64,000 nt of DNA, from contig NW_024704752.1 in assembly GCF_018977255.1 (NCBI RefSeq), positions 19,592,001 to 19,656,000 on the forward strand. The letters are read 5' to 3'. A model generated the notes under the pieces. It was given only the letters and a program-made list of their open reading frames with translations, was not told where the DNA came from and did no database searches. The stretch comes from Callorhinchus milii (Eukaryota). Position 1 is the stretch's first letter. Each line of letters starts with the position of its first letter. Made by a program: the position numbers and the translations under genes. Positions 1,222-61,503 of the stretch are shown in pieces.

Positions 1222-1287
1222 CATCTCAATTGGGATCAGCTATGTCCTGGCTGGCAGTGAGGCCTTTGCCGAACTTTTGCAAATCAG
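1222..1287 (+). CDS. Internal exon A of putative Trp/Tyr-permease-like (APC fold) amino-acid transporter
   Basis: Acceptor ttgattttctccag|, donor AG|gtaagg; 66 nt, phase 2-2; encodes ISIGISYVLAGSEAFAELLQI(R); TM3-like; joins exon B in frame. Confidence 0.88.
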
Positions 1288-3914
1288 GTAAGGAGCATTA
1301 GCTTTGTACAACGGGAAATGATTTGTGAGAATTCATGGCTTGTTTGTAATGAGCTCGGATACCTTTGAATAACTTTTGAGTATCTCAATTGTCATCTGAG
1401 ATTCTGTGTAAAGTGGAGCAAAACATACCACTTAAAAAGCCAAGAAGCAGAAGAGTTTTGATGCATTTAAGAGGAAGCCAGATGTACGGGTGAGGGAGAA
1501 GGGAATAGAAAGGTGAGGGAGGGAGGGAGGTGTGAGTGGAGACTTGTGCAGAGTACAAATATTGGTGGACGAGTTAGGCTGAATGATCTGTTTCCGATTG
1601 TACAGTCTACATAAACGTATGTAAAATAAACCTTTTCAGGATTGCTCCAAAGCAGACTTCAAGAAGTCTTGTACAATGTTAGCTGTAAAATCGAGCCTTT
1701 TTCATTTTGATTATATGGTTTAGGGTTGAAATGTTTATAGATTTTTCCCAGCCAATGTGAACCAGTATTATAATGAGGCACATTACACCACCTTCTCCGG
1801 TTTCTCTTATTGAGTTTGTGTCTGAGATTGTATATTATCAGCGGTCCAGAAGAAATGACACATTTAACAATATTAAGAAAATTAATATTCCACATTATTA
1901 TTCAAAGTAATAATACCTAGATAGTGGCTAAAAACCCAAAATAGATCTGGCACATTAATTCTTCTGTCAGATATCATAATAATGTGACTTGGATAAGATC
2001 TACTCTGTTACTATGGTTTTAAAGCCCTTTATACGTTTTTAAAAATGCCATTGTAGATGCCATTGGGTTTGTTTCTGACATCTTAGTTGCTTGATCTAGA
2101 GCAGAAATCCAGTGTAGGATTGATGTACTTAAGATATTTTTCTCAAAGTAGTGCCCTTGGATTTCTATCACTTGAGTTGTGTCAACAACCAAATGTTCAG
2201 AATCTCATCTCTTAAAAATTGACGAGTGCTGTAGTGGCTGGTATAGTATTGCTCATTAGAACATATCTTTAGGGTATATCAACGGGCCGAGGTTTGCTGA
2301 TCAGACCTATGACACATGACTGCATAGATCAACTTGAACAGCTAAAGGGAGATTTTGCACAGCTGAAAGTGACCAGACTTACTGTCTCCCTCCTTTGGTT
2401 ACAGTCATTAATTACCTTCTTTAACGTAAAATCAAAGCAATATTTTCTTTTTTAAAACAAAGGCTTCACAGTAATCTTTTGTTACATTTAGCAAACACCT
2501 GAGCTGGAAACGCAAAATGTAGGCACGTTTTAATACTGGACTCCCAACACATATCTATTGGGTTACACTCTGAGATGCCATTCGAGGTGAAGGACGCTAT
2601 GTAAATGAAATTTGTTGTTGCTGTTACTCGGTGAATTCTAAATGTTTCTGTATGGGTGAAGATGAGTTTTCACTTTACTTACAAAAAATCCATTGAAATC
2701 AAAATCATGGAAATTTTTTTTTAAGAATTGCACATTTCTAACTGAGATTTAGGGTCAGATTCTATGGGATGCCTTCATTATGTCCTAAATTATTAATTCG
2801 TTGCGGGCCACTAGATTTCAAAGCATCTTTCTTTACAGTCTTCATCATAAATGCACAACATACTCGAAGCTTAGTTTTAATTATTGACATGTGATTGCAA
2901 ACGTGTGATTAAATAACACGACTTCCTATCCGTCAGCAGATAATGATAGTTGATGACAATAATTGGAGAGGGAATAGACTCTTTCTTACAGTATCTTGGA
3001 GTGATAAGGACGTTCATGATTCTTCTCACAAAGAGAAACAATAAAGTGTGGTGTCAACATAAAGGTATCTCCACTCAGTGTTGCAAATGCATTGACTAGA
3101 ACAGCCATCGATTTAATAACAGTAAGGAATCACAATTATCAGGTATTGTGTCTAATTATTTTTAAATGAAACAATAAATGTAAAAATGGTTTAATGTTAT
3201 AGTGGGTGTATGTTTATTCCTTGTCTTGGAGTAATATTTTTCTGCGAAATCTTTTGATCATTTCATATTTCTGCAAAGACAATGCAGTATTGTGAAATTC
3301 CTTGCCACGTTTTAATGTTATATAGGCACATCAACTTTGTCACGATTCTCAGTGTGTTATAATGATGGCTTTTAGGTATGTGCTGGATGGAAAATGGTTA
3401 GATCTCAGCATGGTTATTTAAACTTGCTGTTTGAAATTGTTTTTGATGCATTTTACTTTTGCTATACAGCATTTTTCTTTTGATTCCCATCATCAGATCC
3501 CTACGTACTGTAGGTTAAATGTCAGGGCCCACTTCGTTTCTCTTGATGGAAACGACCACAGAAGTAATTGGGCTTAGCTTGATGGAAACCTGACAATTTC
3601 AACATTGCATTTATTTTATTTTGCACCTCAGCTGTGGTGTGAAGATAAAAGCTGATAATTGGGACATGGTATTTTAACCGTTTCATAAATCAAGCACAGG
3701 TAAGGAAGGCCAGGAAGTGTGTTTTTTAAACTGATCTCGCTCTCTCTCTCTCTCTCTGATACACTCTTATTGAATCAGTTGTTGCTTCCAATTGAGCTTC
3801 TACCAGTCACCAAAAAGCTTTGTTTTGCTTCCAGAAGGAAGTCCCCTACATTGTAAGTCACAACTCCCTTAAGCCAAGTGTTGTAGCAGGAGCACCAGAG
3901 GACACGGCCTGCTA

Positions 3915-4420
3915 TTGAAGGGGGTAAATTAAAAATAAATCTGCCGAAACACTACTTCAGTGAGCGAGCAGTAAACGTATGGAACAGGCTCCCCAGGGAG
4001 ACAGACGGTCGAAACAGAAAGTGATGTTTGTTTCGAGAACAAATTAGATACAACAACAACAAGATTGCATTTATAGAGCGCCTTTCACGTAGGGAGGACG
4101 TCCCAAGGCGCTGGACAGTTGGGTCAGGACCCGAGCATTGGGGGGAAATGGTCAGGGTGAGGGGAGGGAAGGGAGGGAGCGAGGAGGGGGGAAATGGTCA
4201 GGGTGAGGGGAGGGAAGGGAGGGAGTGAGGAGGGGGTAGAGAGTCGAGAGGGGAGCTGAAGGCACGGTTGAAGAGAATCTAACAGAATAGATTTCTGTTA
4301 AAAAATAAATATCTGGGGATACAGTGTATGGTTTGGGAAAAGACCTGTCAAGTGACTGTCAGCAGAGTGCAAGGCGAACTGGATGGATTTTGGTCTTTTG
4401 TCTGGTAGATTCTTTTGTCC
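3915..4420 (+). mobile_element. CR1-clade LINE 3' fragment interrupted by L2 (4050-4277)
   Basis: aaacactacttcagtgagcgagcagtaaacgtatggaacaggctcccc = KHYFSERAVNVWNRLP (CR1 ORF2 end); resumes as tagatttctgtt...ggggatacag after the L2. Confidence 0.75.
4050..4277 (-). mobile_element. L2 LINE 3' end inserted into a CR1 fragment
   Basis: Near-identical to the 3' UTR of 25841-26379, with (CAA)n on the + strand. Confidence 0.92.
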
Positions 4421-5113
4421 TTATGTTCAATGGTCTTTATTATTCGGGCTCTGCACAATCCGAGAAACTGAATAAGTCAGGCTTCACATTTTCGATCTAA
4501 ACATATTTGCACGTTTCTTGATTCAGACATCAGAGAGCTCAAAAACAAAGGTCACTTGAGTAAATGGACGGCCTACAAAGATATTAAAGTGCTCTGAATT
4601 GAAAGCGTCATTCTTTAAAAAGAAGGATTGAGTAAATTCCCTTCAATAATAACCTTGTATTTTCGGCTTGTCTAGTATTTTTTTGAAAGTCTTGCTAAAG
4701 TAAAATTATATTTTGGCGATCGTTGTATTTTGTAATCTCATTATTTTTTAATTTTTTTTTGTGGGTGGGAAGTAGGAGGAGAAAGTCCGAACAGTTAGAT
4801 TTCAGGATGATTTCAACTTCAAAAACTCATAGAAAAACCATCTGGTACAATTTGGGATTTGAACTTTTCTTTATATAATATATAGTATAATAATCACAGC
4901 TATCTGAGATCTTTTATCCAGATTTGTTTAAACTTGTCATTTTAAAGTCTGATGAGAAGCAATTTGTGAGAGAGAACTCGATTCTGATTGTAAATGGCAA
5001 AGGATTTGTAATTCAGTATCTGCAGCACAAAATCGCATCAATTCTATATGTAGCCTTGAGAATTGCTTTTAAATGCATATTTCTGAAGTATCCCTGGAAT
5101 GTGATGAGGAATC

Positions 5114-5147
<34 letters not shown>

Positions 5148-13434: not shown

Positions 13435-13558
13435 GTATCTGCACGTCATCCCGTTCTTCACCTGGATCCTGGTGCTGGGTATTATCACAGCTCAAGTTGT
13501 TCTCCAGCCAATTATGTCCATTTTGACGCTTGTGAAAGGATCGTTTTTAATCCTCACA
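13435..13558 (+). CDS. Internal exon B of the same transporter
   Basis: Acceptor tttttgacccag|, donor CA|gtgagt; 124 nt, phase 2-0; YLHVIPFFTWILVLGIITAQVVLQPIMSILTLVKGSFLILT (two hydrophobic helices). Confidence 0.92.
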
Positions 13559-14313: not shown

Positions 14314-14627
14314 ATAATAATAAGCCTTGCATTTGATACAGCACTTTTCACATCTTCTAGATGTCTCAAAGCGCTTCACCGTATAGACTTTAAAGTGAAT
14401 TGACTGTATGTTTGTGGGCGAAACGCGGCAGCCAATTGCGCACAGCAGCGTCCCACAAACAGTCGTGGATTGAGTGAACAAATTATTATTGTGTTTTTTT
14501 TTCTTGAGCGATTATTATTAGGTGTGTGGAGTAAGGAAACTTGTCCAACGTTTGGCCCTGCCTGGGAATCAAACCCAGGTCTCTCGCTTGCGAGGCGAGT
14601 GCTCTCACCACTGAGCTCCAGGACTCC
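14314..14627 (-). mobile_element. Full-length tRNA-derived SINE (short body, GAGACGTCTC-type tail)
   Basis: tRNA head with CGC loop, Deu-like block, (TTA)n; extra tail fragment at 14211-14280. Confidence 0.9.
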
Positions 14628-19479: not shown

Positions 19480-19520
<41 letters not shown>

Positions 19521-34864: not shown

Positions 34865-35187
34865 TAATAATAATAATAATCCTTGTATTTGATATAGCGC
34901 TTTTCACGTCAGGAGGACGTCCCAAAGCGCTTCACAGAATATACTGTAAAGTGAATTGACCGTATATTTGTGGGCGAAACGCGGCAGCCAATTGCGCACA
35001 GCAGCGTCTGTCCCACAAACAGTCGTGGATTGAAAATGACCAATTTATTATTGTTTTTTTTCTTGAGGGATTATTATTAGGCTGTGTGTGGAGTAAGGAA
35101 ACTTGCCCAAGGTTTCGCCCTGCCGGGAATTGAACTCAGGTCTCTCACTTGCAAAGCGAGTGCTCTAACCACTGAGCTACAGGACTC
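34865..35187 (-). mobile_element. Full-length tRNA(Ala)-derived SINE with Deu-like domain and L2-type tail
   Basis: Head GAGTCCTGTAGCTCAGTGGTTAGAGCACTCGCTTTGCAAG..GAGTTCAATTCCC (A/B boxes, TGC anticodon loop); ctgtttgtgggac..gctgtgcgcaattggctgccgcgtttc domain; (TTA)n tail. Confidence 0.92.
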
Positions 35188-41336: not shown

Positions 41337-41337
41337 N
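41337..41337. other. Single ambiguous base (N)
   Basis: cattggNaaa. Confidence 0.99.
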
Positions 41338-41884: not shown

Positions 41885-42250
41885 AGTGGTTAATGCGCTT
41901 GTCTCGCAAGCGAGAGGACCTTGGTTCGATTCCTGGGCCGGACAAAACCTCACTCAAATTTCCTTGCACCACACGCCTCTGTTCACCTCGAGGTAAGTAG
42001 GAACCCAGCTGTTAGTCGATTGGTGGATCGCTTTCGGGGGGTAATAATCCCTTAAAAAAAACAAAGTTTGGTCACTCAATCTATGACTGTTTGTGGGACA
42101 CTCACTGCTGTGAGCAATTGGCTGCCACGTTTCACCCACAAATATACAGTCAATTCACTTTACAATGCATTTGGTGAAGCATTTTAAGCCGCATCAATGA
42201 TGTGATAAGGTGCTGTATCAAATCAAGTATTATCATGATTATTATTATTA
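41885..42250 (+). mobile_element. tRNA-derived SINE, long-body variant, older
   Basis: cagtggttaatgcgcttgtctcgcaagcgagaggaccttggttcgattcc head; same body; (TTA)n tail ends ~35 nt before exon C. Confidence 0.88.
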
Positions 42251-42285
42251 ATCCTTTTGTTTTCAATGTTGTTCCCTGCGTGTAG

Positions 42286-42385
42286 GTAATTGTCACCTTT
42301 GTTGTGGGCTCAGAAGTTCATCAAGAAATAAGCAATGATTTCTCCAGCATTGGCACTCCCTTCCTGATGGGGACTGTCGCACTGG
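42286..42385 (+). CDS. Internal exon C of the same transporter
   Basis: Acceptor gttccctgcgtgtag|, donor GG|gtaagt; 100 nt, phase 0-1; VIVTFVVGSEVHQEISNDFSSIGTPFLMGTVAL(G). Confidence 0.92.
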
Positions 42386-43201
42386 GTAAGTGATTTCATT
42401 TCCAAGTTTCTAATTTTATTTGATATCAGGAGTGACTATATATGGGAGCAAAAATCCCAAATTTTGCAAAATGCCACAATTGTTTTAATCTTCGGGCTTT
42501 TGAATGGAAGAGTAGTCTACAGTATTTGATAAAGAAATAGGTTTTGAATATATCCACAGAATCCTCCCTTATGTTAATTTCAAGGCATTTTTTTAAACAC
42601 ATAATTTATCTTAATTGCCAAAGTAATTTTAGGGTGTCTCGAGACTGTATTCAGGGTGATCGGTACTGAAACACATCTGGAAGCTATGTAATTAGATGTT
42701 TTGTCAGTTGAAGCTAAAATCAAGATGTGTGCTATCATTAATGCTCATTTTGTACAACAACGTTGGCTAAATTGCACCATCATGAACACTTGTGCTGTGT
42801 TTCTACTGCGGCTTGACACCCTGCAGTATAGCAATATGGAGAGAGTGTTTGGTTTATATCTTCACATTCCACATACCGTATTGATTTGACTCAGAAACAA
42901 AAGAGCACCACATTTTGGGATTCTATGTGTGCACACCTTAGCGCAATTCACAGCATCACAAAATCACCAGAGTTCGTAGAAGATTTGTTTCACAGGGAGT
43001 CCAACTTCCTTGAAATTCTATAAAATAAGCAGTTGGAAAAGATCGTTTCAATAATGGTGATTTGATTGTAGAAAACACAACTGCGGTTTATTCTCCAATT
43101 GTCAAAACAGATTCCTTAACAGCAAACAAACTCGTGGGCCTGAAACTTATACCTGCGTTCTTCACCTTACAGCTTCCAGTAACAGTCAGAACATACAAAG
43201 C

Positions 43202-43536
43202 AATAATAATAATCCTTAATAATAATCCTTGCATTTGATATAGCGCTTTTCACGTCGGGAGGACGCCCCAAAGCGCTTCACAGAACACACTGTAAAGTGA
43301 ATTGACTGTATATTTGTGGGCGAACGCGGCAGCCAATTGCGCACAGCAATGTCCCACAAACAGTCGTAGATTGAAAATGACCAATTTTTTTTTATTATTG
43401 TTTTTGGTTTTGGAGGGATTATTATTAGGCTCTGTGTGGAGTAAGGAAACTTGCCCGAGGTTTCACCCTGCCGGGAATTGAACTCAGATCTCTCGCTTGC
43501 AAAGCGAGTGCTCTAACCACTGAGCTACAGGACTCC
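43202..43536 (-). mobile_element. Full-length tRNA-derived SINE, same subfamily as 34865-35187
   Basis: Near-identical head, body and tail. Confidence 0.92.
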
Positions 43537-46500
43537 ACAATGTCACAAAGCAAGTCAAGGGTGTCTGAGGATGACTTTGCCTCAAGCTAAAACCCACCAT
43601 TAATGACTGATTGTGAAGGTTTCTAGTTTGAATGGACAATGCAGTTTGGCTCAATATTTCTTTCTTGCAACACAGTGATCCCAGAAATAATGATTCTGTG
43701 GGGGTAGGGAGACTCGCAGAGCTATTCAGTTGGGAAATGCAGGTGAAACCAATGTCAGTCACAGCTACTGACACTGATGAGATCTAATGACTACCTTTGA
43801 ATCCATCACAGTCATTTGTTACCTTGGAGAAAATTCCCAAAGCAGTCTTCTCAGGCAGGTGAAGAGCAGAGTGGAGCTAATACGTACAGAAGGTGACCAA
43901 CAAATGCCTTTTAGTGCTTGTTTCACATTGTGTTTCTCGCAGCACAGAAAGTACAAGTACTGTATTGTACTGGCTCATAGACTGAACTTACAACTCGATG
44001 AATGTTCAAACACTGCCCATTATAAAATATAAACTGTACAGCACCACAGATTTATGAGGCAATTGTACAACCTCACGAAGCACAGATCTGCCATCTAGTA
44101 TCTCCCAAACAACTTTATTTTTGCTAATCATCAGTATCTAGACCAACTGCCACACTTGTGCTATTTTTCTTAAAGATAAAGTCATCTTCAATTAAAAGTT
44201 GGCCTGGGCAAGGAGGGCAACTATGGTTGCGATTTTCTTTTCAAGATGCCTTTTTGTTTTAGGAGATTCGCAGTGGTGCAATAAGAATATGCATTGCACT
44301 AGCAGAAGCTGATCTTAATAATAATAAAAAAAATCTTGCATTTGATACAGCGCCTTATCCCATCTTCAAGACGTTTCAAAGCGCTTCACAGAATTTACCG
44401 TGAGGTGAATTGATTTGTGATTTTGTGGTCCAAACGAGGCAGCCAATTTCACTTCACGCAAATCCCAATTGCCAAATCAAGTCTATTTGTTCACGATTTC
44501 TCAACAGTTTATTTCCTTGCTTGCGTCAAAGCAATCAATTACAGTTGTTGAAAGAAGTACTTTTAGGAATGTTTCGGTCCTGGGCACCAGGGTGCAGAGG
44601 TTATTGATCAATTCATGTTGAGCATGAGGCAACATGGTGAAGTCAATTTATGTGATTATATCACAGCATAAATACTTTGTGAAGTTGCAGCAAATAGATC
44701 ACGTGTTATTTAGTTAACCGTTTGACATGGATATTTAATTTTACCCATGAAAGAGCTTTTAAATTGCATTTCAGTATCTTCCTTGTGGAATTTCACAAGT
44801 GCATTTCCCAGAACGAAGCTTTGTGCTGGCTCTGTGCTCGTAGACAGACGGACAGAAAGCAGAGAAATGTGTTTAATGGCTTCTGCTCCTTTTCACTCAT
44901 AGAGATTGATTCTTGTTCAGTCATACAGAAAAAAGCTTTGGAAGGAAAACAACAACAACCTGCATTTATTCAGCGCTTTTCATGCAGGATAGCGTCTCGG
45001 AGTGCTGCTCCCAGGGGAAAATTCAGTTACAGTACTTCAGTTTCTCGCTTTGCTTGGATGCCCAGACCATCCATCTGGAAAGTGAAGTAGTGGAGGGTTA
45101 TTTATTTGATAACATTTAAAAACAAAGCGAATAAATGTAAAGAATTTGTATAGTAATCTGAAAAGAGTGGATAAGAACTGAGATCAGGAACGATTTGTTT
45201 ACACATAGGGTTGGGTGGATGTGGAATCCTGTGCCCCAGAAAGCTGTTGAGGCTGATCAGACGGGATGTTTAAAAGAGAGGTAGACACCAGTTGTGTTGG
45301 GGGGACGTATATATTTCAAAAATGGTTCCTCATGCTTCCCCCTGACTCTGGAAGACACATTAACAATAATATTAATGTTCATTAATTGCACCTGCTTCTC
45401 AAAACCCAATCAGAAATCATCACAAAGGATGTTAGGCTTCAGTTTGTTAAATGCGAGTTAAAGTCTGGAATTATTTACACCTGTTCCTCCAGTAATGGAT
45501 TCTATGTCGTGTTTCACGTTGAGCACCAGCTGGCTCGGAATTTCTCCAAACTCAGATCCTTTCTGAAACTCAGATGTCTGGAATCCAGGACGGCCCCAGA
45601 TGTTAGTACATCAACAATGGCAATGTCGGTGAATAGCCCTCTAGAGCTGCTTAGTGACACACCCAGAGCTCGTGTCAACACAGTTGTTTCCCGCAGAGCT
45701 GGGAGAGCTCAAATGGTGGATATCCAGGGCTGAAACAAGTGAGATTAAGGCTGTATTCTAAACTGGATCCCAGTTCAGTGATGTTAGATTTATACGATTA
45801 CCAAGTTGCTGTTGAAGTTGTTTTGTTCTTGACTTAGCTGGGCCTCACCAGCACTAGTAGTGATGAGGGTGCAATATCAAGGAAGAAAAAATCTTTTTTT
45901 AACGACTGTGGAAACCCTAAAGGTTTGAGCTCAGCTTAGCTCCAATGCTCCCTGTGGTAAGGTTTGTTGAACCTCCGTTGACAAATGTCCAGTCACACAG
46001 GATACCTGAGGTCCGCTATTGTCTGTGGAGACATTGGCACCAGTAGAAAGGAAAAAGGAGCCAATGCCTTCAACAGAGGCGACAACGGGAGACAAAATTA
46101 TAATGGAAAAATATATAGCTGATTATGAAGCAGGGGGAGTGCCATCGGAAGGCAAAAGAAATTAATCTTTGCTTGTCCTTTAAATGAGAACTCCACATTA
46201 AACAACAATTAATATCCAAGGTCCCGCAATGCAGTTATTCTTTCACCTTTGATGGCCCTCCAGTGGCAGATATTGTGACCAAAGCATTGTACTTTGTTGT
46301 CTTTCACTGTGTTGCCTTTTGCCTGGAAGACAAATGTGAAAAACATATTTGACGTCACCCCTGTGAATATTCTATCCCAATTATACCTTAAAAGAAAGGC
46401 AATTTTAATCACTCCTGCTGTTATTCATAAATCAATCTCCCCATTGCTTCAATATTCTGCGGATATTAAAAAAAGAAGCATCCTGAAAGAAACAAGAGTT

Positions 46501-48895
46501 GTGGAAAAAAGAAAGTTCGCCACATAATGTGTATCCAAATATTCGCCAGTGCCTGCTTGCTTTCTGTAAAGGAAAAAGGGCAGATGAATATTATCACAAA
46601 GCATATTTCAAAATAAAGACAACCCCCTGGGAAATACAGATTGACCGGTAAGGTTTTACTAAAGCAGAAATGCCTTGCTGTAGAACAAAATAGTCAAAAG
46701 CTCGGGATGTAGGACGCGAGAAAAATGCTGCAGATAATTAAATATCGAATTGCTCTAACATTTTTATGACCAGTAAATCGTGAATCCACACAGCTCTCAA
46801 AAAGTCATTATAGGTTCCTGTGCACAATATATTTTGGAATGAAGGACATGAACTGCAAACCGCAATGTGAAATTATGACCATGCAAAGAAATATTAGGAA
46901 TATGGCACATACAAAACAAGCAAAACCCAAGACTGATCTTAGGAATAACAAATTACCGATGATTTGCTTTGCGGTGCCTGCTCCCAGTTCAATATTCAGG
47001 AAGTACTACGCCAGTTTGAGATCCAGAAAATAGGATAGGCAGGCACATAGCCTTTGGAAGATCAGTCAAGAAAGCCAAAACAAGAAACACCAAAAACGTG
47101 CAGCACGGGGTGTCTGAAAACAAATAACAGTAAAACGAGCAGAAACACAGACAAGAAGATTTCAACATTTGGAAAGGCAGCTTCCTTCAACGGTAAATGA
47201 TCGTTAGTGCCCACTGAGGAGCCAAACACGTTGTATTTTGGACACTACTGTTATCTACGGAATGTCCTCACACAAGGAGCACACCTTCACACACCTTCAT
47301 GATGGATATTTGCATCTCTTGTCATTCTTCCAGAAAACTTGCACATTGCCATCCTCTTTCTGGTGCACGTGACAGAAGTTTGACCAAGGTTGTTCTAGTA
47401 GGACATCAATTGAATAAGAACCCTAAAATAAGCCGCATCAAACCTTTAATGTAAGTACATTTAAATGCATGCCAGCATTAGCAGCCAGGAACACAAGTGA
47501 TATGAGTTTGCTGCCCAGATCAGTATCAGCGACATGGGTCTGATAAAAGCATCTCATTCAAGCTCATTTTATAATTAGACGACCCAACATGATAGCGATT
47601 CCCAGTCTGATTTTAGATCATTCTCAAATTAACTTATCTCTGTGGGATGCACAGAAAATTATATATCTTTTTAAAAACCCTTCCACGGAGGGAAACTTAT
47701 TTTGAAAATGCCCTCTCGCCCCCCCTCCCACATTGTGCTTTTCCCTTTAAAACCCAGTGAATGCTTCTGGTGAGAATTGAGATAATGAAAAGTAAATCGA
47801 GATTAAAGCTTCACACAGCCTGTTCAACCAGTGATTGCCCATCTAGACGTGTCTTATTAAAACATCCAGACTATACTTGTATAAACAATCTGGATAGTTA
47901 TTGCTTTCGGATCAGGCTCAGAAAATGAAGGTTTGACCTTTAGAATCACAGTAGATGGTTTCTATAGTAACTCAGAAACCAGTTTCTATGAGGTTTGTTA
48001 TTTGAATATTTTCCTATTTTATGGCCATTGTTTATAAGACTGTGTGGTGGATATTGAAGGCTTCAATCATAGGAGCGAATCAATGTTTTTTTCAATTAAG
48101 AATGAATATTACAAAATATCAGCTATTCTCAGGAACAATTTAATTGGAAAATATCTTTAAAGAACATCTGTATAAAAGTAAGCTTAATCTTTTTACTGGC
48201 ACAATCTGAATATGTAGAATTAAAATGAAATGGGCACAATTTTCCAACCGAACGCAGTTAGGAATACTGTTCAATTACTTTCTACAACAGACACCATGTA
48301 CCTAAGTTTAACATCTGATCTGAACAAAAATGCATCCAACAGTGCTCTCCCAACACTGCACTGGTGCGTCCGCTTAGTATGTGAACTCAACGTTCCTAAC
48401 ATGAGACTGGAACCCACAACCTTTAGACCTAAAGGTGAGAGCCACATTCAGTCACCCGCCTGACCCAAATATACATATATATATATATATACTGGAAAAA
48501 AATAAATGGTTGAACTTGGTCTTTTAAAGTCTCACAACAACATATCCTGAAGCTTTAGCTGAATATCTGTTCAAATGTCTTACGTGCTTTTCATGCTTTC
48601 CCGGAAAATATACATTTTGCAACTTGAACCGATTATCTTGCAACCAATTTTGTCAGCCTTATCGTTTTAAAGGAAAAAGATGCCAAACATCCCTCTATTG
48701 AGGTTCACATAGATTGTACAATACAGAAGCTATCTACTCTGTCCATAGATTTTTCATTTAATGTTTTAGAAATTAAATTACATTAGGGAGTTTTTGAAGC
48801 TAACAAAGATGTGGATTCTCAATGAAACTGTGCGACCATAAATAAATGAAACAAAATTGATATCTATTAATGCCCTTGATTTCTCTTTTTTTCAG

Positions 48896-48954
48896 GAGGA
48901 GTTGTAAATGTGATGCCAATGTTATTTTCTGAGATTTCACAGAACAGATGCCAG
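48896..48954 (+). CDS. Internal exon D of the same transporter
   Basis: Acceptor ttctctttttttcag|, donor CAG|gtaaca; 59 nt, phase 1-0; (G)GVVNVMPMLFSEISQNRCQ. Confidence 0.9.
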
Positions 48955-49732
48955 GTAACATAGTACTTTTATTTCACATAGATTCATTGCAATATTTTTC
49001 TCACTTGGATATCATTTGGATATCCTTGATGCTTCATTATATATTTAAACACAGCATTTTTGTATGTTAGTTCGGCAGAAAGAATATATCTTAATTAATA
49101 ACCTGTCCGTAATAGCTCAATGGTAATCATTGGAAACCTGAAGCGACGGAAATAAATCCCTTCATTCTTATATTATTTGGTAAAAGAGAAGTGTCTTACT
49201 TACTCAGAATAAACTGGTATTGATTTGTACAAAGCATTTACTAGAAAATAGTGTCAAATATACAGAACTTCAAAGTTAAGCCAAATTCTGGATGGTATAA
49301 ATTGCTAAATAAACAAATTCTAGACCCAGGTAGAATTTCCTCCCAGTCTAGGAGTCTAGAAAACAAAAAAAGCTAAAATCTCAGATCAGAATTTGAAATA
49401 ATAACGTACATTGACATGTTGGAATAATTGCCTGAATTAAGGATTCCTAGACTCCGGGTTTTAAATAATTAATGACCATTTACTTGGATTTCCAAATGAT
49501 TGTATGAATGAATTGTGACGTCCTCCTGACGTGAAAGGCGCTGCACAAGTCTAATTTGATGCTGTTGTTGAATTCTTTAGTCACTTTGTATCAGCTAAGA
49601 CAGCATAATAATGTGTTGACTATAAGTTGTTGACTTTGTTATATTAAAGATTTTATTAAATCGCTGTGTGTTCTGTTGGCTCCTCATGTACTGTACACTT
49701 TACGTCAAGTTTTGTTTCTTCTCTTGCTGAAG

Positions 49733-49797
49733 GTTTTGTGGTTCCGGCGAGCTATCATCGGAGGACTTACAACTTGTGCAATCCTCAATATTTTTTG
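49733..49797 (+). CDS. Internal exon E of the same transporter
   Basis: Acceptor tttcttctcttgctgaag|, donor TG|gtaagc; 65 nt, phase 0-2; VLWFRRAIIGGLTTCAILNIF(W). Confidence 0.9.
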
Positions 49798-52759
49798 GTA
49801 AGCCGTCAAATGTACTTTTGTGGTAAAGATTACTAATTTATTATTGAATCAATTACAGTTTTTAAAGCAGTCTAGCATGCCACAGGAGCCTCCAAGAGCA
49901 ATATCAAACTCTGAGACAAGAGTGCAACTAACTGAGCCAGACTGTCAACTGCGGGAAATTTACGAGTTGGGCTGATAAAATGTTTCATCAGTTTACCACC
50001 CACGGTTCAGTCTAGGCATTTAGACAGGTATCAATGCCTGTTCACAAATTCCAACATTGGTTTAACATAATGGTAAATCTGCTGCACTAAAACCCACGAA
50101 AAAAAATCAACCTAGCCAATTATCAGAGCAAATTGCAATTAACTTTAGTTGTGGCTGCACATTCCAAATCATTATCTGGCACACTCTACTGATGGTGCAA
50201 GTCACCACATTAGCCTAATTCAATATCAGCAGAATAAAATCGATATGATTAATGACTTTTTAATATCTGTCTGAATAAGTCTGTTAACATAAGTTCATAT
50301 ACCACACTGACATATCTGAGCACACCGTGAATTAGTACTGGTGAGTTTTGCTCGTGATATTGAGTGCTGCAATATGTGTATCACAGATATACAGTATTCG
50401 TGTGTTATTCATGATAACATTGAGGGCAGAATCTACAGCATAAAAGAAGCAAAGATTGAGCTGAAGCATCAAATCCCTTAGTTCAGCTACTTCTTTGCTG
50501 ATATCTGTTTTGAGTGTTACATCTTAATTGACATAAACAAAGAAGCTGTGAGTCAGTCTACGAAGCATTTTATTTTCTAAATAGAAACAAAAGAGATTGG
50601 AGCTTGAGTTGTCCCTGAAACTGGATGAAACACAACCTCTTTGCATCGAATTGTTTTGTTTTTTGTGCAAAACAATAAGAAGGCGGAAAACACTTTTGTA
50701 TTCAACCAGGAATTCACAAGAAAAAATGTAAACGTTGCGTAAGTATCATTGGTATGAAAATGCAAAATATTCCTCTCAAATAACAAGGACCTAAAATGTG
50801 TTCAAGGAAAAAGGGGTGTGAAGCAAAGACATGCCAGAAGAAGTTTATTTCTTTTATTCGTGAATATTTTTAAACAGCAACATGTCACAGACATGCTTTG
50901 GTAAAATGCATTTAGGAATTGTTGGCAATTTAGTAGGATTTCATGTTAGAAAAAAATAATCAAAAGGCAATTGTCAAAGTCAATGTCAATGAAGGCTCAA
51001 CCAAATACTTAGGAGGAAATAGAAAATAAAACATTTCAGAGTACAAACTTGTTTAGTAAATGACTGAGTTTTGTGTTAGAGGTTGCTACAGTACAATATA
51101 AAAGTGTGTGAAATAATCACTGCACTCAAGAGGTTTGAAAGGTATGACTGTCCGATAGAAATATTGTAAATTTGCAAATTGAAGAAAGCAGAATGAAGTT
51201 AAATGGGAAACATTTAAGGTGAAAGGCGAGTTAGCAAGGGAGTGTAGGATGTGGTTTTCCACTGAAACAAAGAAATCATGGAGACATCCACCTCGAAATT
51301 GAAAGCAATTTTGAAGATTGCAACTGAACTCTTCGGAAGGATTGTTGCCTGAAGTTGTAAGGAATGTGCAGTGACTGCCTTCGTCAGCTTAAATTTCAAT
51401 TAGTAAAATTGACCAATTATTTTCTTGCATTAGTCTATTCTGTAAAAGTTCCTTCAGAATAGGCAACTACCTCATTACTCTAACAACAAATATTGCAAAG
51501 TAAAACGCTTTACGAGTCATTTTGTCACTCAAAATGCAAAAGTGCTTTAAGTATCGGGTCGTGTGATCAAACTTATGACAAGACAAAATAGAGTTGCAAA
51601 TAAATTGATTATAATGTCCATCCCCCCCCCCCTTACCAGTAAGCAGCTAATCGGTGCAGAATAACATGTGAGATGCAGAATTCAACAATGTTGTCAGGAA
51701 ACAGTGACTGCATTGATTACAGTGAACACGTGTGACATCGCTTTGCTGGTACCAATGAAAACGAGGATGCAATTTGCTGTGAACAGACTGAATTAAAATT
51801 TTCATCTCATAGTCAAATGAATTTTTTACGGAATGTAATTGATTGGACCAAAATTGCAGACTCAAATATTTGCTTAGCATTTTCAGTGTTTAATTATTAT
51901 GCTAAGCCGCTGGAAATAAACTAAAGTGTTTGACTTTATCCCACGGTGGGTATGTAGCACTCTGGAAACTCAGTTGACCTGATATTGGTGATCTTCTCAT
52001 GACGGGTTTACACTGAGAGTTTAAGGACTCAAAGATGCTATCCTGTATGAGGGGCACCATATACATGCAAGTTGTTGTTGTGTTTCACAGTGATTGGTTA
52101 AATTGACAAGCCTTGGAAGTGTGAGCACGGCTCAGGAGAAACCACTTATGTTGCCTTCATTGATTTCTGTAAGATTGAGTGTCACGTGGTCAAGGAAGCC
52201 AATGGAATATAACCTGGAAATCCTCTGAGAGGTGAACTTCAGACTCTAAGCTTTCTGTGATGGTCGATAAGAGAGCGCTTTAATATTGTTTTTGAAGACT
52301 TACTGTTTATTCATGTTTATTTATGCTGATTTGAAGGTGTATTAAATTGTGAACTTTTATGTAAATTCAAAACGTTACATGAGAGCTGGCTTATCCACTT
52401 AACGTTACTTTTTACTGGTAATGTTGTTTTTTTTATCCCCTGAAATTACCCTAGGGCCATATTTTCCAGGATTTTGCATTTTGCACTATATAAAGAATAT
52501 AATGACATGAATTCTGACCGACAGTATAATTAAGGGGCACTTGAGAATTTTTGTAACAAACATGTTGTGTCAGTAACTATATCTGCCGTGTAGTTTTGCA
52601 TAATGTATTGCGGTGTTAACTCCCGGTGGTTTTCAGACAAGTTAAAACTCATCTGAGCAATGCCATTTCAATGAAGAAATGTAAGAATGACGGTGGAAAT
52701 AGCATGGGTAGCAGGAGGTTTAGTATCGCTAAGGACAGGAACAATGGACAGAAGAAAGT

Positions 52760-56468: not shown

Positions 56469-58019
56469 GAGCAAGCTATTATCAATGTACGTCAGCGACT
56501 CTTTCCTGCACTTGTTTTAAACTTTCAGAGCCCGATAGATTTTCTGTTGCTACTGTCAGCTGTGACTTGAAAGGCTGCCATTTTAATCAGACAGACAGCA
56601 CCTGAGACATAGCCCTCTTGTTTCTAGTAATGAAGGATGCGGTGGACATTGGAAGGCTTTTCCTATTGTAACCACATTACCGGCAGCTTCTGAATCATTC
56701 CTTTCCAGCTTCACTTCAGAATAATTTAAGTCGGTCTTGTAGAGGTACTCAGCTGATGCCAAGGATTTATATCTCGTCAGGTGTTCCCTGATGTTAAATA
56801 CAGATTATAATTAGATCCAGTGGTGTTTTTTCCCTATCCTCGTATTAGGTTGAGTTTTTTTTTATTTAAACAGAGCACAGATAAATAGAGCAGCTTGTTT
56901 TTATGATGGGAGGTCAATTGGATGGTTTTATATTATAATAGTTTCGTTAAATGAAAGGCTTCTTTGCGTAAGTGTGACAGATGAGTCCTGTGACTTAAAT
57001 TAATTCAAATAAGTGCAACCAGTATTCTCATTCTCTTACCTACTTACACTTGCACAGAAAACAGAAAATTGCAGGTTTTTATTGTACTATATTGTATTGT
57101 ATTCAATTACCTTTTAATTTGCTTTCCAACCACAGGAATGTGTTAAACACTGTTGTAATTAGTTTGTAAGTATTTTTAAGCATGAGCATGCAGAACAAAG
57201 CACCTCTTCTGTTTGCTTCCAATTTGTAGAGTCTTGAATTGAATTTCACTTGCCAATAATTTATCTGCACACATCTGGTCTGCCCCCACCCCCTCCCCGA
57301 TATCACAGCTCCCTCCCTCCTTGGTGTCAAATGCAAATTGAACTATTTTGGCATAAAGAGCCACAAGTAGGTTGGTGGTAGTTTGGGGACCCCAGACGGT
57401 ATGTTTCGATACTTCTGAAGTTTAACCAAATAAAAACCGCAGAACTTATTATAGAGTTCCCACTTTCCCCCCAGATGTTTCCTCATCGAATTCCATAGCT
57501 ACATAATCGTTTAAGGTTAGATTTACACCTCTGCCCATTCAAAATAGTTTGTGCACGACCCACTCTCGGTCAGCAGACAAATTGCACTATCTACAGAGAA
57601 GAGTTTTAAATAGAAATCCTGGCAACCAAATTTACATTTATCCGGGAGGCAAGGTTCTGATTTAATTACTTAATTACTTTCTGTAAAAAACTCTGCAATG
57701 TTTGATAAAGCAACAAATGCCTACCATCCATTTAGTGAACACCACTAAAATCCAATATGTATATAAATGCAATATTTAAGGAGAAAGGGAAATCTAGAGG
57801 GAGTGCTTTCTGTTCAAATTACTATCCTAGATGTGCTGTGGAATGAAAAAAAGGCAATTCAGCCAAGTGCTCACTACATCAACAGCAACTCTCATTTTCA
57901 CATGCAATATACATGTTCTCACTGTGCCAGGAAATAAATCTAATTGCAGTTTCCAATTTTTCAAGTCAAAATGTAGCTACTTCAGCTTTTTAAGCAGCAA
58001 TTCCAATAGTAAAAAAAAT

Positions 58020-58240
58020 TATAATAATTATAATAATAATCCTTGCATTTGATAAAGCGCCTTATCATGTCTTTGAGACGTCTCAAAGCGCTTCACAGAA
58101 TATACTGTAAATTGAATTGACTGTGTATTTTGTGGGCGAAACGTGGCAGCCAATTGCGCACAGCAGCGTCCCCACAAACAGTGGTAGATTGAGAGACCAA
58201 ATTATTATTATTTATTTATTTTGAAGGGATTATTATCCCT
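58020..58240 (-). mobile_element. 5'-truncated copy of the same SINE family
   Basis: Tail and Deu-like block; other truncated copies: 1069-1175(-), 5143-5240(+), 6184-6246(+), 18232-18335(-), 18495-18682(-), 19480-19660(-), 29822-29950(-), 30676-30855(+), 34250-34480(+), 37360-37430(-), 40230-40345(-), 44318-44450(-), 54847-54990(+), 62332-62427(-). Confidence 0.88.
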
Positions 58241-59977
58241 AATATATATTAATATTATTAATATAGCAAATGTTCACCAATCATGTCATCTTAATTAATT
58301 ATCTAGAATGTTGGAAAATCTTAAAATAGGGACTAACAGGGTATGATCATGGCAAGTGCAGTAATCTCCTGGAAGGTGAGTAATTGATTTTGTTTATGCT
58401 GAGTGCAACCCATTCAAGCTATCCAAATTAATGATGGGAACAAAATATTCATTTGAAACATTTGTCATGTACTTAGAGACATAAAAGTCATTGTTTCAGA
58501 ACTAAAGAAGTATTTTTGCACCTTGTTTTACAAAATATAGATGTGTTAAACAAAATAAGTGAACCACTTATATTAATAATAATCTTTACATTTGATATAT
58601 GCGCCAGACTATAGAAAAAGGGACTTTAAATTGATTAAGGGAGGAGGGATATATGTATTTATAAATAGATTCATCTATTTATCCATTTGATCTATTCCAA
58701 CAAAAAACAACAATGGGAATATTGTTTATTGTTAAGAAGTAAGCTTAGAGTGTAATTAGTTTTGATCAAATAAACCATACTTTAAGGAAGCAGAGAAGGC
58801 CAAGATTTTCTTATTATCTTTGAGTTATGGAGACAATCTTAATAGGAAATTCTCGAATGATAAACTGAGCAAAAACAGGCAATGGAGACATGCCTTCCTT
58901 CAGCTCTGATGACATGGACAGGAGGGTTTTTGATGGGAGATCAGTTGGACACCTGCCTATTCACACGCCCACATCTCATAACAGCGTGGCCTCAGGAGGC
59001 TGTTTGGTTTTATGAAATGTGGCTGTGCATCTCGAACAAGAACACAGCCTCAGCACAAACACGGACGGCCTGTCCGCAATGATTGCACGTGGTTCTCCAC
59101 CCTGAACAAAACAAGAAAAATATCATCCAAAATATCAAATATCATCAAAGCTCTTCCTCATCCGGCCTTTTAGATCAGCTCAATTACACCTCCCAGCTTC
59201 GTGCTGAATCCCATCTTTAAGCGCTCTGAGCCGCTCCCCTGCGTGGAGGGCACCACATTAAGTGCAAGTTGTTGTTTTTGTTGAATGCCGCGCCACGTTT
59301 CCTCTCTTTACGACAAAAGCAACCACTTGCGTGTCTGTCGCGCCCTCCACAATGCGCAGCATCCCGGAGAGCTTGTAAATACCCGGAACGCACAGTGTGC
59401 CAGACTGTTCTGATTCTGGAAACAAAAGGAGCCGGACTTCTCCAGCAGAAAAAAACAAGACAGGTTCTGTCTGAGGTCGAGTTGTCCCATCTCACGCAGG
59501 TTTTAGCCACTGTCTTAACGTTTTTTTGTCTGAGAATGCAAGGGCTTCTGTTCCCCTCACACCCTCGCGGCTTCCTAATATGGCCGTACACAGCTCTGCT
59601 CGATTCGATGTCTCAGGGTCACAGATCACCAATTGGCTCAGCAGCTGTTTGTTGAACGCACGGCTGGACGCAGGACACTGCTGCGCTGTCGTTCCAGGGG
59701 GAAATCTACCCCGGCCTGAATCCTTCAATACCTCGGCCACCTGAAATTCAACCTCTTGTGGTCAGGACCGCATTACAGGCACAAAACACGTAATGCTAAG
59801 GGATTAATGCTCCACATGGCAGTACATTCTGTGCATGTTGATGCAGTTAACGGGACCCCCTATAGTAAGCTCATAGGGTCAAATGCATTGCAACATGAAG
59901 CATCAAATGCTCGGTAAAACGTATTCCATGAGTAATTTGCAATGCAGATCAGAACTTCATTTAAACTAAGTTCTGAT

Positions 59978-60219
59978 CAACAACAACAACAACAACAACA
60001 ACAACAAGATTCCATTTATAGAGCGCCTTTCACGTCAGGAGGACGTCCCAAGGCGCTGCACAGTTGGGTCATGACCCGAGCAGGGGGGAAATGGTCAGGG
60101 TGAGGGGAGGGAAGGGAGGAGAGAGGAGGGGGGAAATGGTCAGGGTGAGGGGAGGGAAGGGAGGGAGCGAGGAGGAGGAAGAGAGTCGAGAGGGGAGCTG
60201 AAGGCACGGTCAAAGAGAA
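59978..60219 (-). mobile_element. L2 LINE 3' end (young)
   Basis: Near-identical to 25841-26070, long (CAA)n tail. Confidence 0.93.
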
Positions 60220-61318
60220 GCTATGAAGCAATAAGCAATTGCTGTTTGGGTTTAAAGACAGAGGACAGCGAGGACAGCGATCTTAATCAAAATTACAAAA
60301 GCCATTTATTGCAAATGAAGCGCCATGAGCCACTGATGAGTGTACAACCACTTTTAATATTACTTTTTATATTTACTTTTTATTGTGTTTGAAGGGAAAA
60401 AATTTAAATGTTTCAAACAACAGCCAACAGCCCTGAGATTGGTATCAAAATGGGACAGTGATCGTGAAGATTACCTTCAGAGTTAAGTCTGTTGATGGTG
60501 ATTATGATTTGTAATTACCTCTTGATTCAATCCTGTAATATAATTAAATTGCCAGTCTTAAAAAGAAGAATGAATACAAATCTCTGCAGTTCTCAAGGGA
60601 GAAGCATCATGACTATCTAATTATTCTTGTTTCTGTAGTGATACAGTTTAGTACCCTGACCCTAATTAAATATGCCATTAAAAGACAGTAGTGAGGAATC
60701 AGGGATCTGACCTTGGTTTAAATATTTCATTTGATTAATATCGAACAAGGTCCATCAAACACAGAGCCAAAACTACTCAAATTGTGATTTCCCGATACAA
60801 ATCAATAGGAAAGCTGATAAAATACAGTCACCACAAAGTTTAATATTAAAATAAAATGGACTGCTACATTCCAGGTCTGCATTATCGTACATAAACCATT
60901 GTATGAAGCTCCTTCACATTATAGTTTGGCACAGTTAATGATAATGTTCATTGATTCCTGGTTCTCAAGGACACAAGTCTTAATGAGTGAACTTTATTGT
61001 CACATTTATCATTTGGAGTTGTTCAGTGGCTGTGATGTGATGGGACACAATTCACCGCATTTGGCAACTTGTTGAGCATTAAACATGAGAATAACATACT
61101 TCCTAGTTTGTTGTTTTACTCAGGTTATAGTCAGGGTTAGCTTTGGAAGAGTTATTTATGAGACCAACTCATTAATAATAATATATACAGTTTATTTTAA
61201 AATCTAACATCTTGATATGGGATTTCTGCACATTCTTCGATGAAAAATAAACATATTTCTGCCTTTTATTTTTCCAAAACAATTTTAGCTTGATAAAGGA
61301 ATTTTTTTCATAATGTGA

Positions 61319-61365
<47 letters not shown>
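61319..61365. repeat. (CT)n microsatellite at the exon F acceptor
   Basis: Read directly; other microsatellites: (CT) 3739-3757, (TA) 5117-5143, (GA) 9248-9268, (TAA) 19480-19520, (TA) 48468-48491, (GA) 56304-56328. Confidence 0.95.
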
Positions 61366-61366
<1 letters not shown>

Positions 61367-61374
61367 ACATGAAG

Positions 61375-61503
61375 GTGTTGGGCTGTATTGAACATTGTTC
61401 CTCAGACATCCACAAGAAAAGTTTTACTTGATGGAAGTGTGAACACCAGTAGCCATATACCTCCTGCCTATAGAGTCATCTACTTCAATATATCCTTGGA
61501 GGA
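61375..61503 (+). CDS. Internal exon F of the same transporter
   Basis: Acceptor (ct)n-ccacatgaag|, donor GA|gtaagt; 129 nt, phase 2-2; CWAVLNIVPQTSTRKVLLDGSVNTSSHIPPAYRVIYFNISLE; two N-x-S sequons. Confidence 0.88.

What the first reader, a model, noticed from the sequence alone, without database searches (positions are those of the whole stretch)
1222..61503. Hidden intron-rich vertebrate gene encoding a bacterial TyrP/Mtr-like amino-acid permease
Seen: six 59-129 nt exons with canonical GT-AG sites and matching phases (2,0,1,0,2) join into ISIGISYVLAGSEAFAELLQIRYLHVIPFFTWILVLGIITAQVVLQPIMSILTLVKGSFLILTVIVTFVVGSEVHQEISNDFSSIGTPFLMGTVALGGVVNVMPMLFSEISQNRCQVLWFRRAIIGGLTTCAILNIFWCWAVLNIVPQ... 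with no stop. Knowledge: helix spacing and motifs (SY..AG in TM3, unwound G..NVMP in TM6, RR.II.G......IFW...L in TM7) parallel the Trp/Tyr permease (HAAAP, PF03222) and Aa_trans (PF01490) families. Inference: I do not recognise it as a human SLC32/36/38 member, so it may be an uncharacterised transporter lineage kept in fishes and lost in mammals.
Basis: partly seen in the sequence, partly recalled or inferred. Interest (0 to 1): 0.8.

Follow-up and report, generated by a model that had tools for sequence, protein, structure and literature searches.

The report
Orphan amino-acid-permease-like gene in elephant shark
The six small exons are real, spliced and expressed. They form the middle third of an already catalogued but unstudied elephant-shark gene for a membrane transporter-like protein that fishes and many aquatic invertebrates share and that was not seen in land vertebrates.

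Summary
Observation confirmed. Six + strand exons lie at 1222-1287, 13435-13558, 42286-42385, 48896-48954, 49733-49797 and 61375-61503. All have AG/GT borders and junction phases 2,0,1,0,2. A spliced 2,922-nt contig of a public run carries the exon 4-5 joint and runs on into exons 3 and 6.

All six exon translations are exact substrings of residues 100-279 of Callorhinchus milii XP_007887134.1, "uncharacterized protein LOC103175764". So the gene is not hidden. It is the orthologue of zebrafish si:ch211-51h4.2.

Every named relative is "uncharacterized" or "hypothetical". Listed relatives are cartilaginous and ray-finned fishes, amphioxus, hemichordates, echinoderms, molluscs, annelids and nemerteans. 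No tetrapod appears among the named rows (350 of the 360 listed). A full-text search found no paper.

A shark orthologue is predicted to fold as an 11-helix LeuT/APC-fold transporter. Sequence links are weak, but they point to the TyrP/Mtr/SdaC (HAAAP, PF03222) family more than to Aa_trans.

The likely function, amino-acid:cation symport, is inferred and untested. Interest is moderate.

The parts
1222..1287 (+). Exon E1 (66 nt). It enters with one base of a split codon and leaves in phase 2. It encodes the C-terminal half of TM3 with the near-invariant LAGSEA motif.
   Evidence: Sequence and splice sites. The in-frame translation 1223-1285 is an exact substring of P0217 residues 100-120 and of P0116 residues 180-200. 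P0116 residues 165-198 form one helix in the model.
13435..13558 (+). Exon E2 (124 nt), phase 2 in and phase 0 out. It encodes TM4 and most of TM5.
   Evidence: Sequence. Exact substring of P0217 residues 122-162. A phmmer search with this exon alone gave 26 hits at E<=0.001; nine were fetched and four of those named, among them fish, whale-shark and acorn-worm orthologues.
42286..42385 (+). Exon E3 (100 nt), phase 0 in and phase 1 out. It encodes the end of TM5, an outside loop with conserved NDF, and TM6a (PFLMGTVAL).
   Evidence: Found. Exact substring of P0217 residues 163-195. Its last 30 bases are the loose end of the spliced X1 contig before 48895.
48896..48954 (+). Exon E4 (59 nt), phase 1 in and phase 0 out. 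It encodes the TM6 break and TM6b (GG..N.MP).
   Evidence: Found. Exact substring of P0217 residues 197-215. The X1 contig lies on it and joins it to E5.
49733..49797 (+). Exon E5 (65 nt), phase 0 in and phase 2 out. It encodes TM7 (FRRA..GL.TC..LNI.W).
   Evidence: Sequence. Exact substring of P0217 residues 216-236. The joint 48952->49731 (cut +2) skips 778 bases with GT..AG in the X1 contig.
61375..61503 (+). Exon E6 (129 nt), phase 2 in and phase 2 out. It encodes the end of TM7 (invariant CWAVL.IVPQ) and the first part of the large outside loop, up to the conserved NISLE site. RefSeq isoform X2 skips it.
   Evidence: Sequence. Exact substring of P0217 residues 238-279 and absent from P0218. 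Its first 30 bases are the loose end behind 49799 in contigs of runs X1 and X8.

Best explanation
The window carries six internal exons, the middle third, of the elephant-shark (Callorhinchus milii) gene LOC103175764. This gene is the orthologue of zebrafish si:ch211-51h4.2.

The protein belongs to a strongly conserved, functionally unstudied bilaterian family of about 560 residues. The family is predicted to form an 11-helix LeuT/APC-fold secondary transporter. The exons in the window encode the second half of TM3 through TM7 and the start of the outside loop after TM7. This stretch includes the glycine-rich break in TM6, which in this fold lines the substrate site.

The family's nearest sequence relatives, at a great distance, are the hydroxy/aromatic amino-acid permeases (HAAAP: TyrP, Mtr, TnaB, SdaC, TdcC; PF03222).

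Inferred, not shown: it works by alternating access as an amino-acid:cation (H+ or Na+) symporter. The substrate's backbone would be held by the unwound TM1 (ILGTGILGLP, outside the window) and TM6 (ALGG..N.MP) segments. The near-invariant TM3 glutamate (LAGSEA) and the TM8 serine/threonine/histidine cluster would be candidates for ion coupling. Substrate, ion and membrane are unknown.
For: Exons and splicing. The spliced 2,922-nt contig with the E4-E5 joint and E3/E6 loose ends is.

Identity: all six exon translations are exact substrings of Callorhinchus milii XP_007887134.1, and the split codons agree.

Conservation: in the 30-sequence alignment A1 (13 fishes, 17 invertebrates), 79 columns are invariant. 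They include PFLMGTVALGG, M282/P283 and IVPQ, all encoded in the window.

Fold: AlphaFold model of the Heterodontus orthologue, pLDDT 70.2 and pTM 0.71, with 11 long helices and a break in TM6 at residue 277. Foldseek gave 91 PDB matches at E<=0.001, all of the 50 listed being LeuT/APC-fold transporters, the best AdiC at 2.2e-6. VIA-align gave Z 30-36 over 350-404 aligned residues for SLC7A10, LAX3/AUX1, ApcT, CAT, LAT1, NRAMP and NKCC1.

HAAAP link:
- PF03222 is matched at E<=0.01 by 11 of 30 members, against 6 of 30 for PF01490.
- PF03222 reaches Pfam's cut-off in 7 of 10 picked orthologues; PF01490 reaches its cut-off in none.
- TIGR00837 (aromatic amino acid transporter) is matched by 4 of 30.
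- hhalign scores of A1 are 30.0 against TyrP/Mtr/TnaB, 28.9 against SdaC/TdcC and 32.6 against all five (P 0.0076, 0.01, 0.0039). The reversed controls score 14.6-17.3 and AroP/PheP scores 12.7.
- The permissive alignment is colinear over 379 columns, with the TM1, TM6, TM7 and P.GF motifs in register.
- The nearest ESM-Atlas clusters outside its own are plant PF03222 proteins (0.93) and bacterial SdaC/HAAAP clusters (0.90-0.91).
Against: - No transport, substrate, ion or location was tested.
- The elephant-shark proteins P0217 and P0218, the Heterodontus protein and the five exons searched singly match no transporter family in Pfam.
- The best PF03222 stretch covers only TM1-2 (profile positions 8-63 of 393), which lies outside the window.
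- hhalign probability is only 5-9%, well below the 84% found between the two accepted HAAAP subgroups.
- A profile search of all PDB sequences found nothing at E<=10.
- The HAAAP TM6 motif FGFHGNVPS is not kept.
- Structure cannot tell the families apart. The AAAP-type auxin carriers LAX3/AUX1 score about as high as SLC7 members.
- I had no AAAP profile for a like-for-like hhalign comparison.
- The model's confidence is middling, and it is of a shark orthologue, not of this species' protein.
- The run with the spliced contig is only guessed to be RNA.
Confidence: 0.8

Rival explanations
1. The family is a divergent branch of the AAAP group (Aa_trans, PF01490: SLC32/36/38, AUX/LAX) and not of HAAAP. 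It would then work like a vesicular, lysosomal or plasma-membrane neutral amino-acid carrier of that group.
For: PF01490 is matched at E<=0.01 by 6 of 30 members. UniRef names several orthologues 'Amino acid transporter transmembrane domain-containing protein'. The 11-helix AAAP carriers LAX3 and AUX1 are ranks 2-4 by structure, with Z 33.9-34.6 and 381-391 residues aligned. An Aa_trans cluster scores 0.93 in the Atlas.
Against: PF01490 never reaches its cut-off: at most 19.9 bits against 25.6. PF03222 reaches its own cut-off in 7 picked orthologues. More members match PF03222 (11 against 6) and TIGR00837. In the named Atlas search, 20 of 30 hits belong to the PF03222 set. The Z-scores of AAAP and SLC7 chains differ by about one unit, so they do not separate the families.
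Confidence: 0.2
2. It has the transporter fold but does not carry amino acids. It would be a sensor ('transceptor'), or a carrier of another solute such as a metal ion or an amine.
For: No function has been tested. The HAAAP TM6 histidine motif is replaced. NRAMP and NKCC chains score nearly as well by structure. The large conserved outside loop (NISL, GEI[AS]T.PL) has no counterpart in the E. coli proteins.
Against: Every sequence-level link is to amino-acid permease families. According to passages of PMC5809530, HAAAP and AAAP hold only amino-acid transporters. The glycine-rich TM1 and TM6 segments typical of amino-acid sites are invariant.
Confidence: 0.15
3. It is a decaying or untranslated gene copy, or a recent bacterial gene transfer into a vertebrate.
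For: The title's word 'bacterial'. One RefSeq isoform skips exon 6.
Against: There is no stop or frame break in any exon, and the translations are identical to the public protein. The spliced contig is abundant, with depth 393.7. 79 columns are invariant across bilaterians. The gene has spliceosomal introns of 0.8-29 kb and orthologues in at least seven animal phyla. Similarity to the E. coli proteins is only marginal.
Confidence: 0.02

Closest known systems
Callorhinchus milii LOC103175764 (XP_007887134.1) and zebrafish si:ch211-51h4.2, with their orthologues
   Same: This is the same gene. All six exon translations are exact substrings of the elephant-shark protein. Identity to the Heterodontus orthologue is 59-60% for teleost rows and 69-74% for the two elephant-shark rows.
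   Different: Nothing differs in sequence. The public records carry no function ('uncharacterized protein'). XP_007887134.1 starts inside TM2, and isoform X2 lacks exon 6.
HAAAP family (TC 2.A.42; Pfam PF03222 Trp_Tyr_perm; E. coli TyrP, Mtr, TnaB, SdaC, TdcC)
   Same: Both have 11 helices; the helix count for HAAAP is recalled. The motifs are colinear: TM1 G.G...LP, a glycine-rich TM6 followed by N.(M/V)P, TM7 with FW...IP, and P.GF before TM10. Some orthologues pass the PF03222 cut-off. hhalign scores stand above the reversed and AroP/PheP controls.
   Different: - The signal is very weak (probability 5-9%).
- The TM6 histidine motif is lost.
- A roughly 50-residue acidic loop lies between TM2 and TM3.
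- A roughly 60-residue outside loop follows TM7, with a predicted hairpin and a conserved N-x-S site.
- The proteins are about 150 residues longer.
- The family is animal, not bacterial.
AAAP family (TC 2.A.18; Pfam PF01490 Aa_trans; SLC32/36/38, plant AUX1/LAX3)
   Same: Same fold and helix number. TM1 matches the start of the Aa_trans profile (positions 7-60) below cut-off. LAX3 and AUX1 are among the best structural matches.
   Different: No member reaches the PF01490 cut-off. No listed homologue carries an SLC32/36/38 or TMEM104 name.
APC-family amino-acid transporters of solved structure (AdiC, ApcT, GkApcT/CAT, LAT1, SLC7A10)
   Same: LeuT fold over about 380 residues, Z 31-36 and rmsd 3.2-3.8. 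Foldseek E-values reach 2e-6.
   Different: Identity is 9-15%. There is no sequence-profile match to any PDB chain. hhalign against AroP/PheP is at noise level, score 12.7. Those proteins have 12 helices (recalled).

Membership tests
Orthologue of Callorhinchus milii LOC103175764 / zebrafish si:ch211-51h4.2 | Exon translations identical to the species' public protein, colinear, with agreeing split codons | tested here: met
   6 of 6 in-frame exon translations are exact substrings of P0217 residues 100-279. The split codons R, G and W agree. tblastn identity is 100% for five exons; the sixth gives 97.7% only because that alignment runs one residue past the exon end.
APC superfamily (LeuT fold) | Two inverted five-helix repeats with broken TM1/TM6, shown by structural similarity to solved members over most of the chain | tested here: met
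   The model is a prediction for the shark orthologue P0116 (pLDDT 70.2; TM6 broken at residue 277). Foldseek: 91 matches at E<=0.001, all 50 listed being LeuT-fold carriers. VIA-align: Z 30-36 with 350-404 residues aligned. TM1 is drawn as one unbroken helix by DSSP.
HAAAP (PF03222 Trp_Tyr_perm) | Score at or above Pfam's gathering cut-off (22 bits) | tested here: inconclusive
   Met by 7 of 10 picked orthologues at 24.2-29.4 bits. Those seven were picked because the listings already showed a precomputed PF03222 hit. In one search, 15 of 120 listed rows carry that precomputed hit. Not met by the elephant-shark proteins P0217 and P0218, by P0116, or by the five exons searched singly.
HAAAP (PF03222 Trp_Tyr_perm) | Significant profile-profile similarity to accepted members over the whole chain | tested here: inconclusive
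   hhalign of A1 against TyrP/Mtr/TnaB/SdaC/TdcC: score 32.6, P 0.0039, probability 8.6%. Reversed control 16.8; AroP/PheP 12.7. For scale, the two HAAAP subgroups score 49.2 against each other. The E. coli profiles are thin (2-5 sequences).
HAAAP (PF03222 Trp_Tyr_perm) | Family motifs: TM1 GT.IG.G...LP and TM6 FGFHGN.PS | tested here: not met
   TM1 is kept in altered form (ILGTGILGLP). TM6 reads ALGG..N.MP, without the F-G-F-H of the E. coli consensus. That these motifs define the family is my reading of the three-protein alignment, not a curated rule.
HAAAP (PF03222 Trp_Tyr_perm) | Proton-coupled uptake of aromatic or hydroxy amino acids | not testable with these tools
   This needs a transport assay.
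AAAP (PF01490 Aa_trans; SLC32/36/38) | Score at or above Pfam's gathering cut-off (25.6 bits) | tested here: not met
   The best score seen is 19.9 bits (P0013). 6 of 30 members match at E<=0.01, all below the cut-off. P0217 and P0218 have no match.
   None of the 120 rows listed in each carries such a name. All named rows are 'uncharacterized', 'hypothetical', 'unnamed protein product', 'Hypp7295' or a UniRef domain label. No tree was built.

The most novel reading that the evidence does not exclude
Animals kept an ancient HAAAP-like amino-acid permease that is unrelated to any human SLC family. It survives in water-living lineages (fishes, amphioxus, hemichordates, echinoderms, molluscs, annelids, nemerteans) and was lost on the way to tetrapods. 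It could be a carrier tied to aquatic life, for example uptake of dissolved amino acids across gill or skin. The acidic loop followed by a hydrophobic pair also allows an endolysosomal aromatic/hydroxy amino-acid exporter that tetrapods replaced.
Probability: 0.12. Interest if true: 0.7.

Novelty: new member of a known kind. Interest (0 to 1): 0.4.

Why it matters
The HAAAP family is known from bacterial work. The review passages I read name mammalian SLC counterparts for AAAP, SSS, NSS, CCC and Nramp, and none for HAAAP.

The family found here is strongly conserved, expressed and widespread in animals, sits nearest to HAAAP, and has no described member. If the absence from tetrapods holds, human-centred SLC catalogues miss a whole transporter lineage. 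That lineage can be studied in zebrafish through si:ch211-51h4.2. It would be a clean case of gene loss at the water-to-land transition.

For genome annotation, it gives a reasoned family placement to several hundred 'uncharacterized protein' records.

Tried and rejected
- Pfam on single exons (E1, E2, E5, E6; E3) found nothing. E4 is 19 residues, under the tool's minimum, and was not sent.
Natural full-length orthologues returned by the tools were used instead.
- A profile search of PDB sequences with A1 found 0 matches at E<=10.
- Default hhalign of A1 against TyrP/Mtr/TnaB gave probability 5% and one 46-column segment. I therefore added controls and did not treat this as proof.
- Earlier notes of this scan held nothing near this place.
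- The paper search for 'ch211-51h4.2' found 0 papers.
- Searches for HAAAP and for dissolved amino-acid uptake gave background only. From I saw the listing and abstract starts and used none of it as evidence.
- SLC38/TMEM104 orthology is rejected on the names of the hits.
- Recent bacterial transfer and pseudogene readings are rejected.
- Nested genes in the introns: no ORF over 146 residues. Rfam found only three tRNA-like SINE heads.
- Absence in tetrapods could not be tested on genomes. Each homologue search lists only the best 120 of 262-301 hits.
- I could not obtain AAAP sequences for a like-for-like profile comparison.

Full report
**The observation.** The window is 64,000 bases at 35-43% G+C with one N at 41337. 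I dropped that step and located the exons from the window itself.

On the + strand there are six exons with standard borders:
- E1 1222-1287
- E2 13435-13558
- E3 42286-42385
- E4 48896-48954
- E5 49733-49797
- E6 61375-61503

The lengths are 66, 124, 100, 59, 65 and 129 nt. The introns are 0.8 to 29 kb long.

**Transcript evidence.** A search for public runs with 42000-50000 listed 12 runs of one coded organism. None is on record as RNA, and several are guessed to be RNA. I laid four of them on 48400-50300.
- Run X1 has one 2,922-nt contig (depth 393.7) that lies on E4 and E5 and skips the 778 bases between them, with GT..AG ends.
- The 30 letters before E4 in that contig are the end of E3. 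The 30 letters after E5 are the start of E6.
- A 244-nt contig of run X8 also runs from E5 into E6.

So three of the five junctions are seen in spliced contigs. These are contigs and not raw reads, and 'RNA' is a guess. However, a form without introns cannot come from this locus as genomic DNA. E4 begins at contig position 290, which equals E1+E2+E3 (290 nt). The contig therefore starts about at E1's first base, and I cannot say why.

**Identity.** Pfam found nothing for E1, E2, E3, E5 or E6 alone. E4 is too short to submit.

A phmmer search with E2 alone against 1.84 billion representatives gave 26 hits at E<=0.001. Among them were a full-length teleost protein named 'uncharacterized protein si:ch211-51h4.2', a whale-shark fragment and an acorn-worm protein. 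All six exons align colinearly to these. Nothing else in the window matches the rest of the proteins.

A search with the Heterodontus orthologue returned two Callorhinchus milii records: XP_007887134.1 (LOC103175764, 477 aa) and 'si:ch211-51h4.2 isoform X2' (475 aa). Every in-frame exon translation is an exact substring of the first, at residues 100-279, and the split codons agree. The second lacks E6.

So the window is elephant shark, which agrees with two earlier notes of this scan. The gene is uncharacterised but not hidden.

**Distribution.** Three homologue searches found 262, 301 and 298 proteins at E<=0.001. Each lists only the best 120.
- With a teleost query, all 120 rows are fishes (teleosts, sturgeons, bichir, sharks, rays).
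- With a shark query, 22 rows are cartilaginous fishes, 4 are sturgeons or bichir, and the rest are teleosts.
- With the acorn-worm query, the rows are hemichordates, sea urchins, sea stars, a brittle star, a sea cucumber, amphioxus, a chiton, bivalves, abalones, annelids and nemerteans, then fishes. Ten of those rows have no name.

No named row is a tetrapod, coelacanth, lungfish, arthropod, nematode or cnidarian. Tetrapods are closer kin of teleosts than sharks are, and many tetrapod genomes are annotated. A conserved tetrapod orthologue should therefore have appeared where sharks do. This is an argument from truncated lists and not a genome search. Every listed name is 'uncharacterized', 'hypothetical', 'unnamed' or a UniRef domain label. 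A full-text search for the zebrafish gene name found no paper, and supplements were closed.

**Family placement.** Alignment A1 holds 13 fishes and 17 invertebrates. It has 79 invariant columns and clear motifs:
- ILGTGILGLP in TM1
- LAGSEA in TM3
- PFLMGTVALGG..N.MP in TM6
- LN..WCWAVL.IVPQ in TM7
- NISL and GEI[AS]T.PL in the outside loop
- SITVS.L..G...H in TM8
- P.GF...L.K before TM10

Scanned one by one, 11 of 30 members match PF03222 and 6 of 30 match PF01490 at E<=0.01. 4 of 30 match TIGR00837, the aromatic amino acid transporter model. I then picked ten orthologues, seven of them because they carry a precomputed PF03222 hit. Those seven pass Pfam's cut-off at 24-29 bits. The best stretch is TM1-2 only. 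PF01490 never passes. The elephant-shark proteins themselves match neither family.

I fetched E. coli TyrP, Mtr, TnaB, SdaC, TdcC, AroP and PheP and ran hhalign:

| A1 compared with | Score | P | Reversed control |
|---|---|---|---|
| TyrP/Mtr/TnaB | 30.0 | 0.0076 | 17.3 |
| SdaC/TdcC | 28.9 | 0.01 | 14.6 |
| all five | 32.6 | 0.0039 | 16.8 |
| AroP/PheP | 12.7 | 0.83 | 16.1 |

For scale, the two HAAAP subgroups score 49.2 against each other. The two HAAAP subgroups hit different parts of A1 (TM7, and TM1-2). A permissive alignment is colinear over 379 columns with the motifs in register.

The ESM Atlas places plant PF03222 proteins (0.93, 192 shared features) and bacterial SdaC/HAAAP clusters (0.90-0.91) nearest. 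These are leads only.

Taken together, the family is a very distant relative of HAAAP. It is not a clear member of HAAAP, and it is less like AAAP.

**Structure.** The model of the Heterodontus orthologue with A1 has pLDDT 70.2 and pTM 0.71. Low-confidence parts are the N-terminus, the acidic TM2-TM3 loop, the middle of the loop after TM7 and the TM8-TM9 loop. I read 11 membrane helices from the DSSP list. TM6 is broken at residue 277, between the two glycines encoded at the E3/E4 junction.

Foldseek finds only LeuT/APC-fold carriers at the top. VIA-align gives Z 30-36 for SLC7A10, LAX3, AUX1, xCT, CAT, LAT1, ApcT, NRAMP and NKCC1, too closely bunched to pick a family. A sequence profile search of the PDB finds nothing, so no close relative has a solved structure.

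**How it most likely works.** Shown: the gene is spliced and present in expressed-looking contigs, the protein is under strong constraint, and it is predicted to have the LeuT fold.

Inferred from what is established for this fold and for HAAAP and AAAP, which review passages describe as holding only amino-acid transporters (PMC5809530, passages read):
- It works by alternating access.
- The substrate is held between the unwound TM1 and TM6 segments.
- Transport is coupled to H+ or Na+. The TM3 glutamate and the TM8 Ser/Thr/His cluster are candidate coupling residues.

The window's exons encode the TM3, TM6 and TM7 parts of that site. Substrate, ion and membrane are unknown.

**Novelty and limits.** The gene model is public, so the sequence is not new. 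What is new is the placement: an unstudied bilaterian family nearest to HAAAP, with no named human counterpart among the hits. I rate it a new member of a known kind, of moderate interest.

The main gaps are:
- no genome-level test of loss
- no AAAP profile control
- thin E. coli profiles
- a fold model of middling confidence from another species
- no functional data

Noticed in passing
window 14554-14624, 35115-35186, 43463-43534 (- strand), with pieces throughout: There are three tRNA-Ala-like heads (Rfam 53-58 bits; ARAGORN anticodons cgc, tgc, tgc). They belong to a roughly 320-bp SINE, and 22 blastn pieces of it lie in both orientations in the introns.
   Followed up: partly
window 61321-61366: A long CT-dinucleotide tract runs up to a few bases before the E6 acceptor and serves as its pyrimidine tract. 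E6 is the exon that RefSeq isoform X2 skips.
   Followed up: no
P0218 (Callorhinchus milii isoform X2) against window 61375-61503: The public isoform X2 joins E5 directly to the exon after E6. This in-frame skip removes the invariant CWAVL.IVPQ end of TM7. Contigs of runs X1 and X8 show the E5-E6 junction. The skipped form was not looked for.
   Followed up: partly
window 48895 (record position 290 of the X1 contig): The 2,922-nt spliced contig has only 289 letters before E4, which equals E1+E2+E3. It therefore begins about at E1's first base, although the public protein continues 99 residues upstream. This could be a contig break at an alternative 5' structure, or chance.
   Followed up: no
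window 49513-49548 (intron between E4 and E5): A stretch of 31-36 bases is matched, with one mismatch, by very deep short contigs in all four runs (word depth up to 14,000). It is probably the core of a widely expressed repeat or abundant RNA.
   Followed up: no
alignment A1 columns about 230-300 (TM2-TM3 loop, outside the window): All members have an acidic run followed by a conserved GHV[IL][IL]-type hydrophobic pair: AGHVLL in elephant shark and AGHVIIP in many invertebrates. It resembles acidic dileucine sorting signals. The motif class is recalled and was not tested.
   Followed up: no
proteins P0002, P0026 and P0013: Several public gene models of this family are chimeric or disrupted. 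One is fused to cadherin repeats, one to reverse-transcriptase-like sequence, and one has an intron read through. They come from other species.
   Followed up: no
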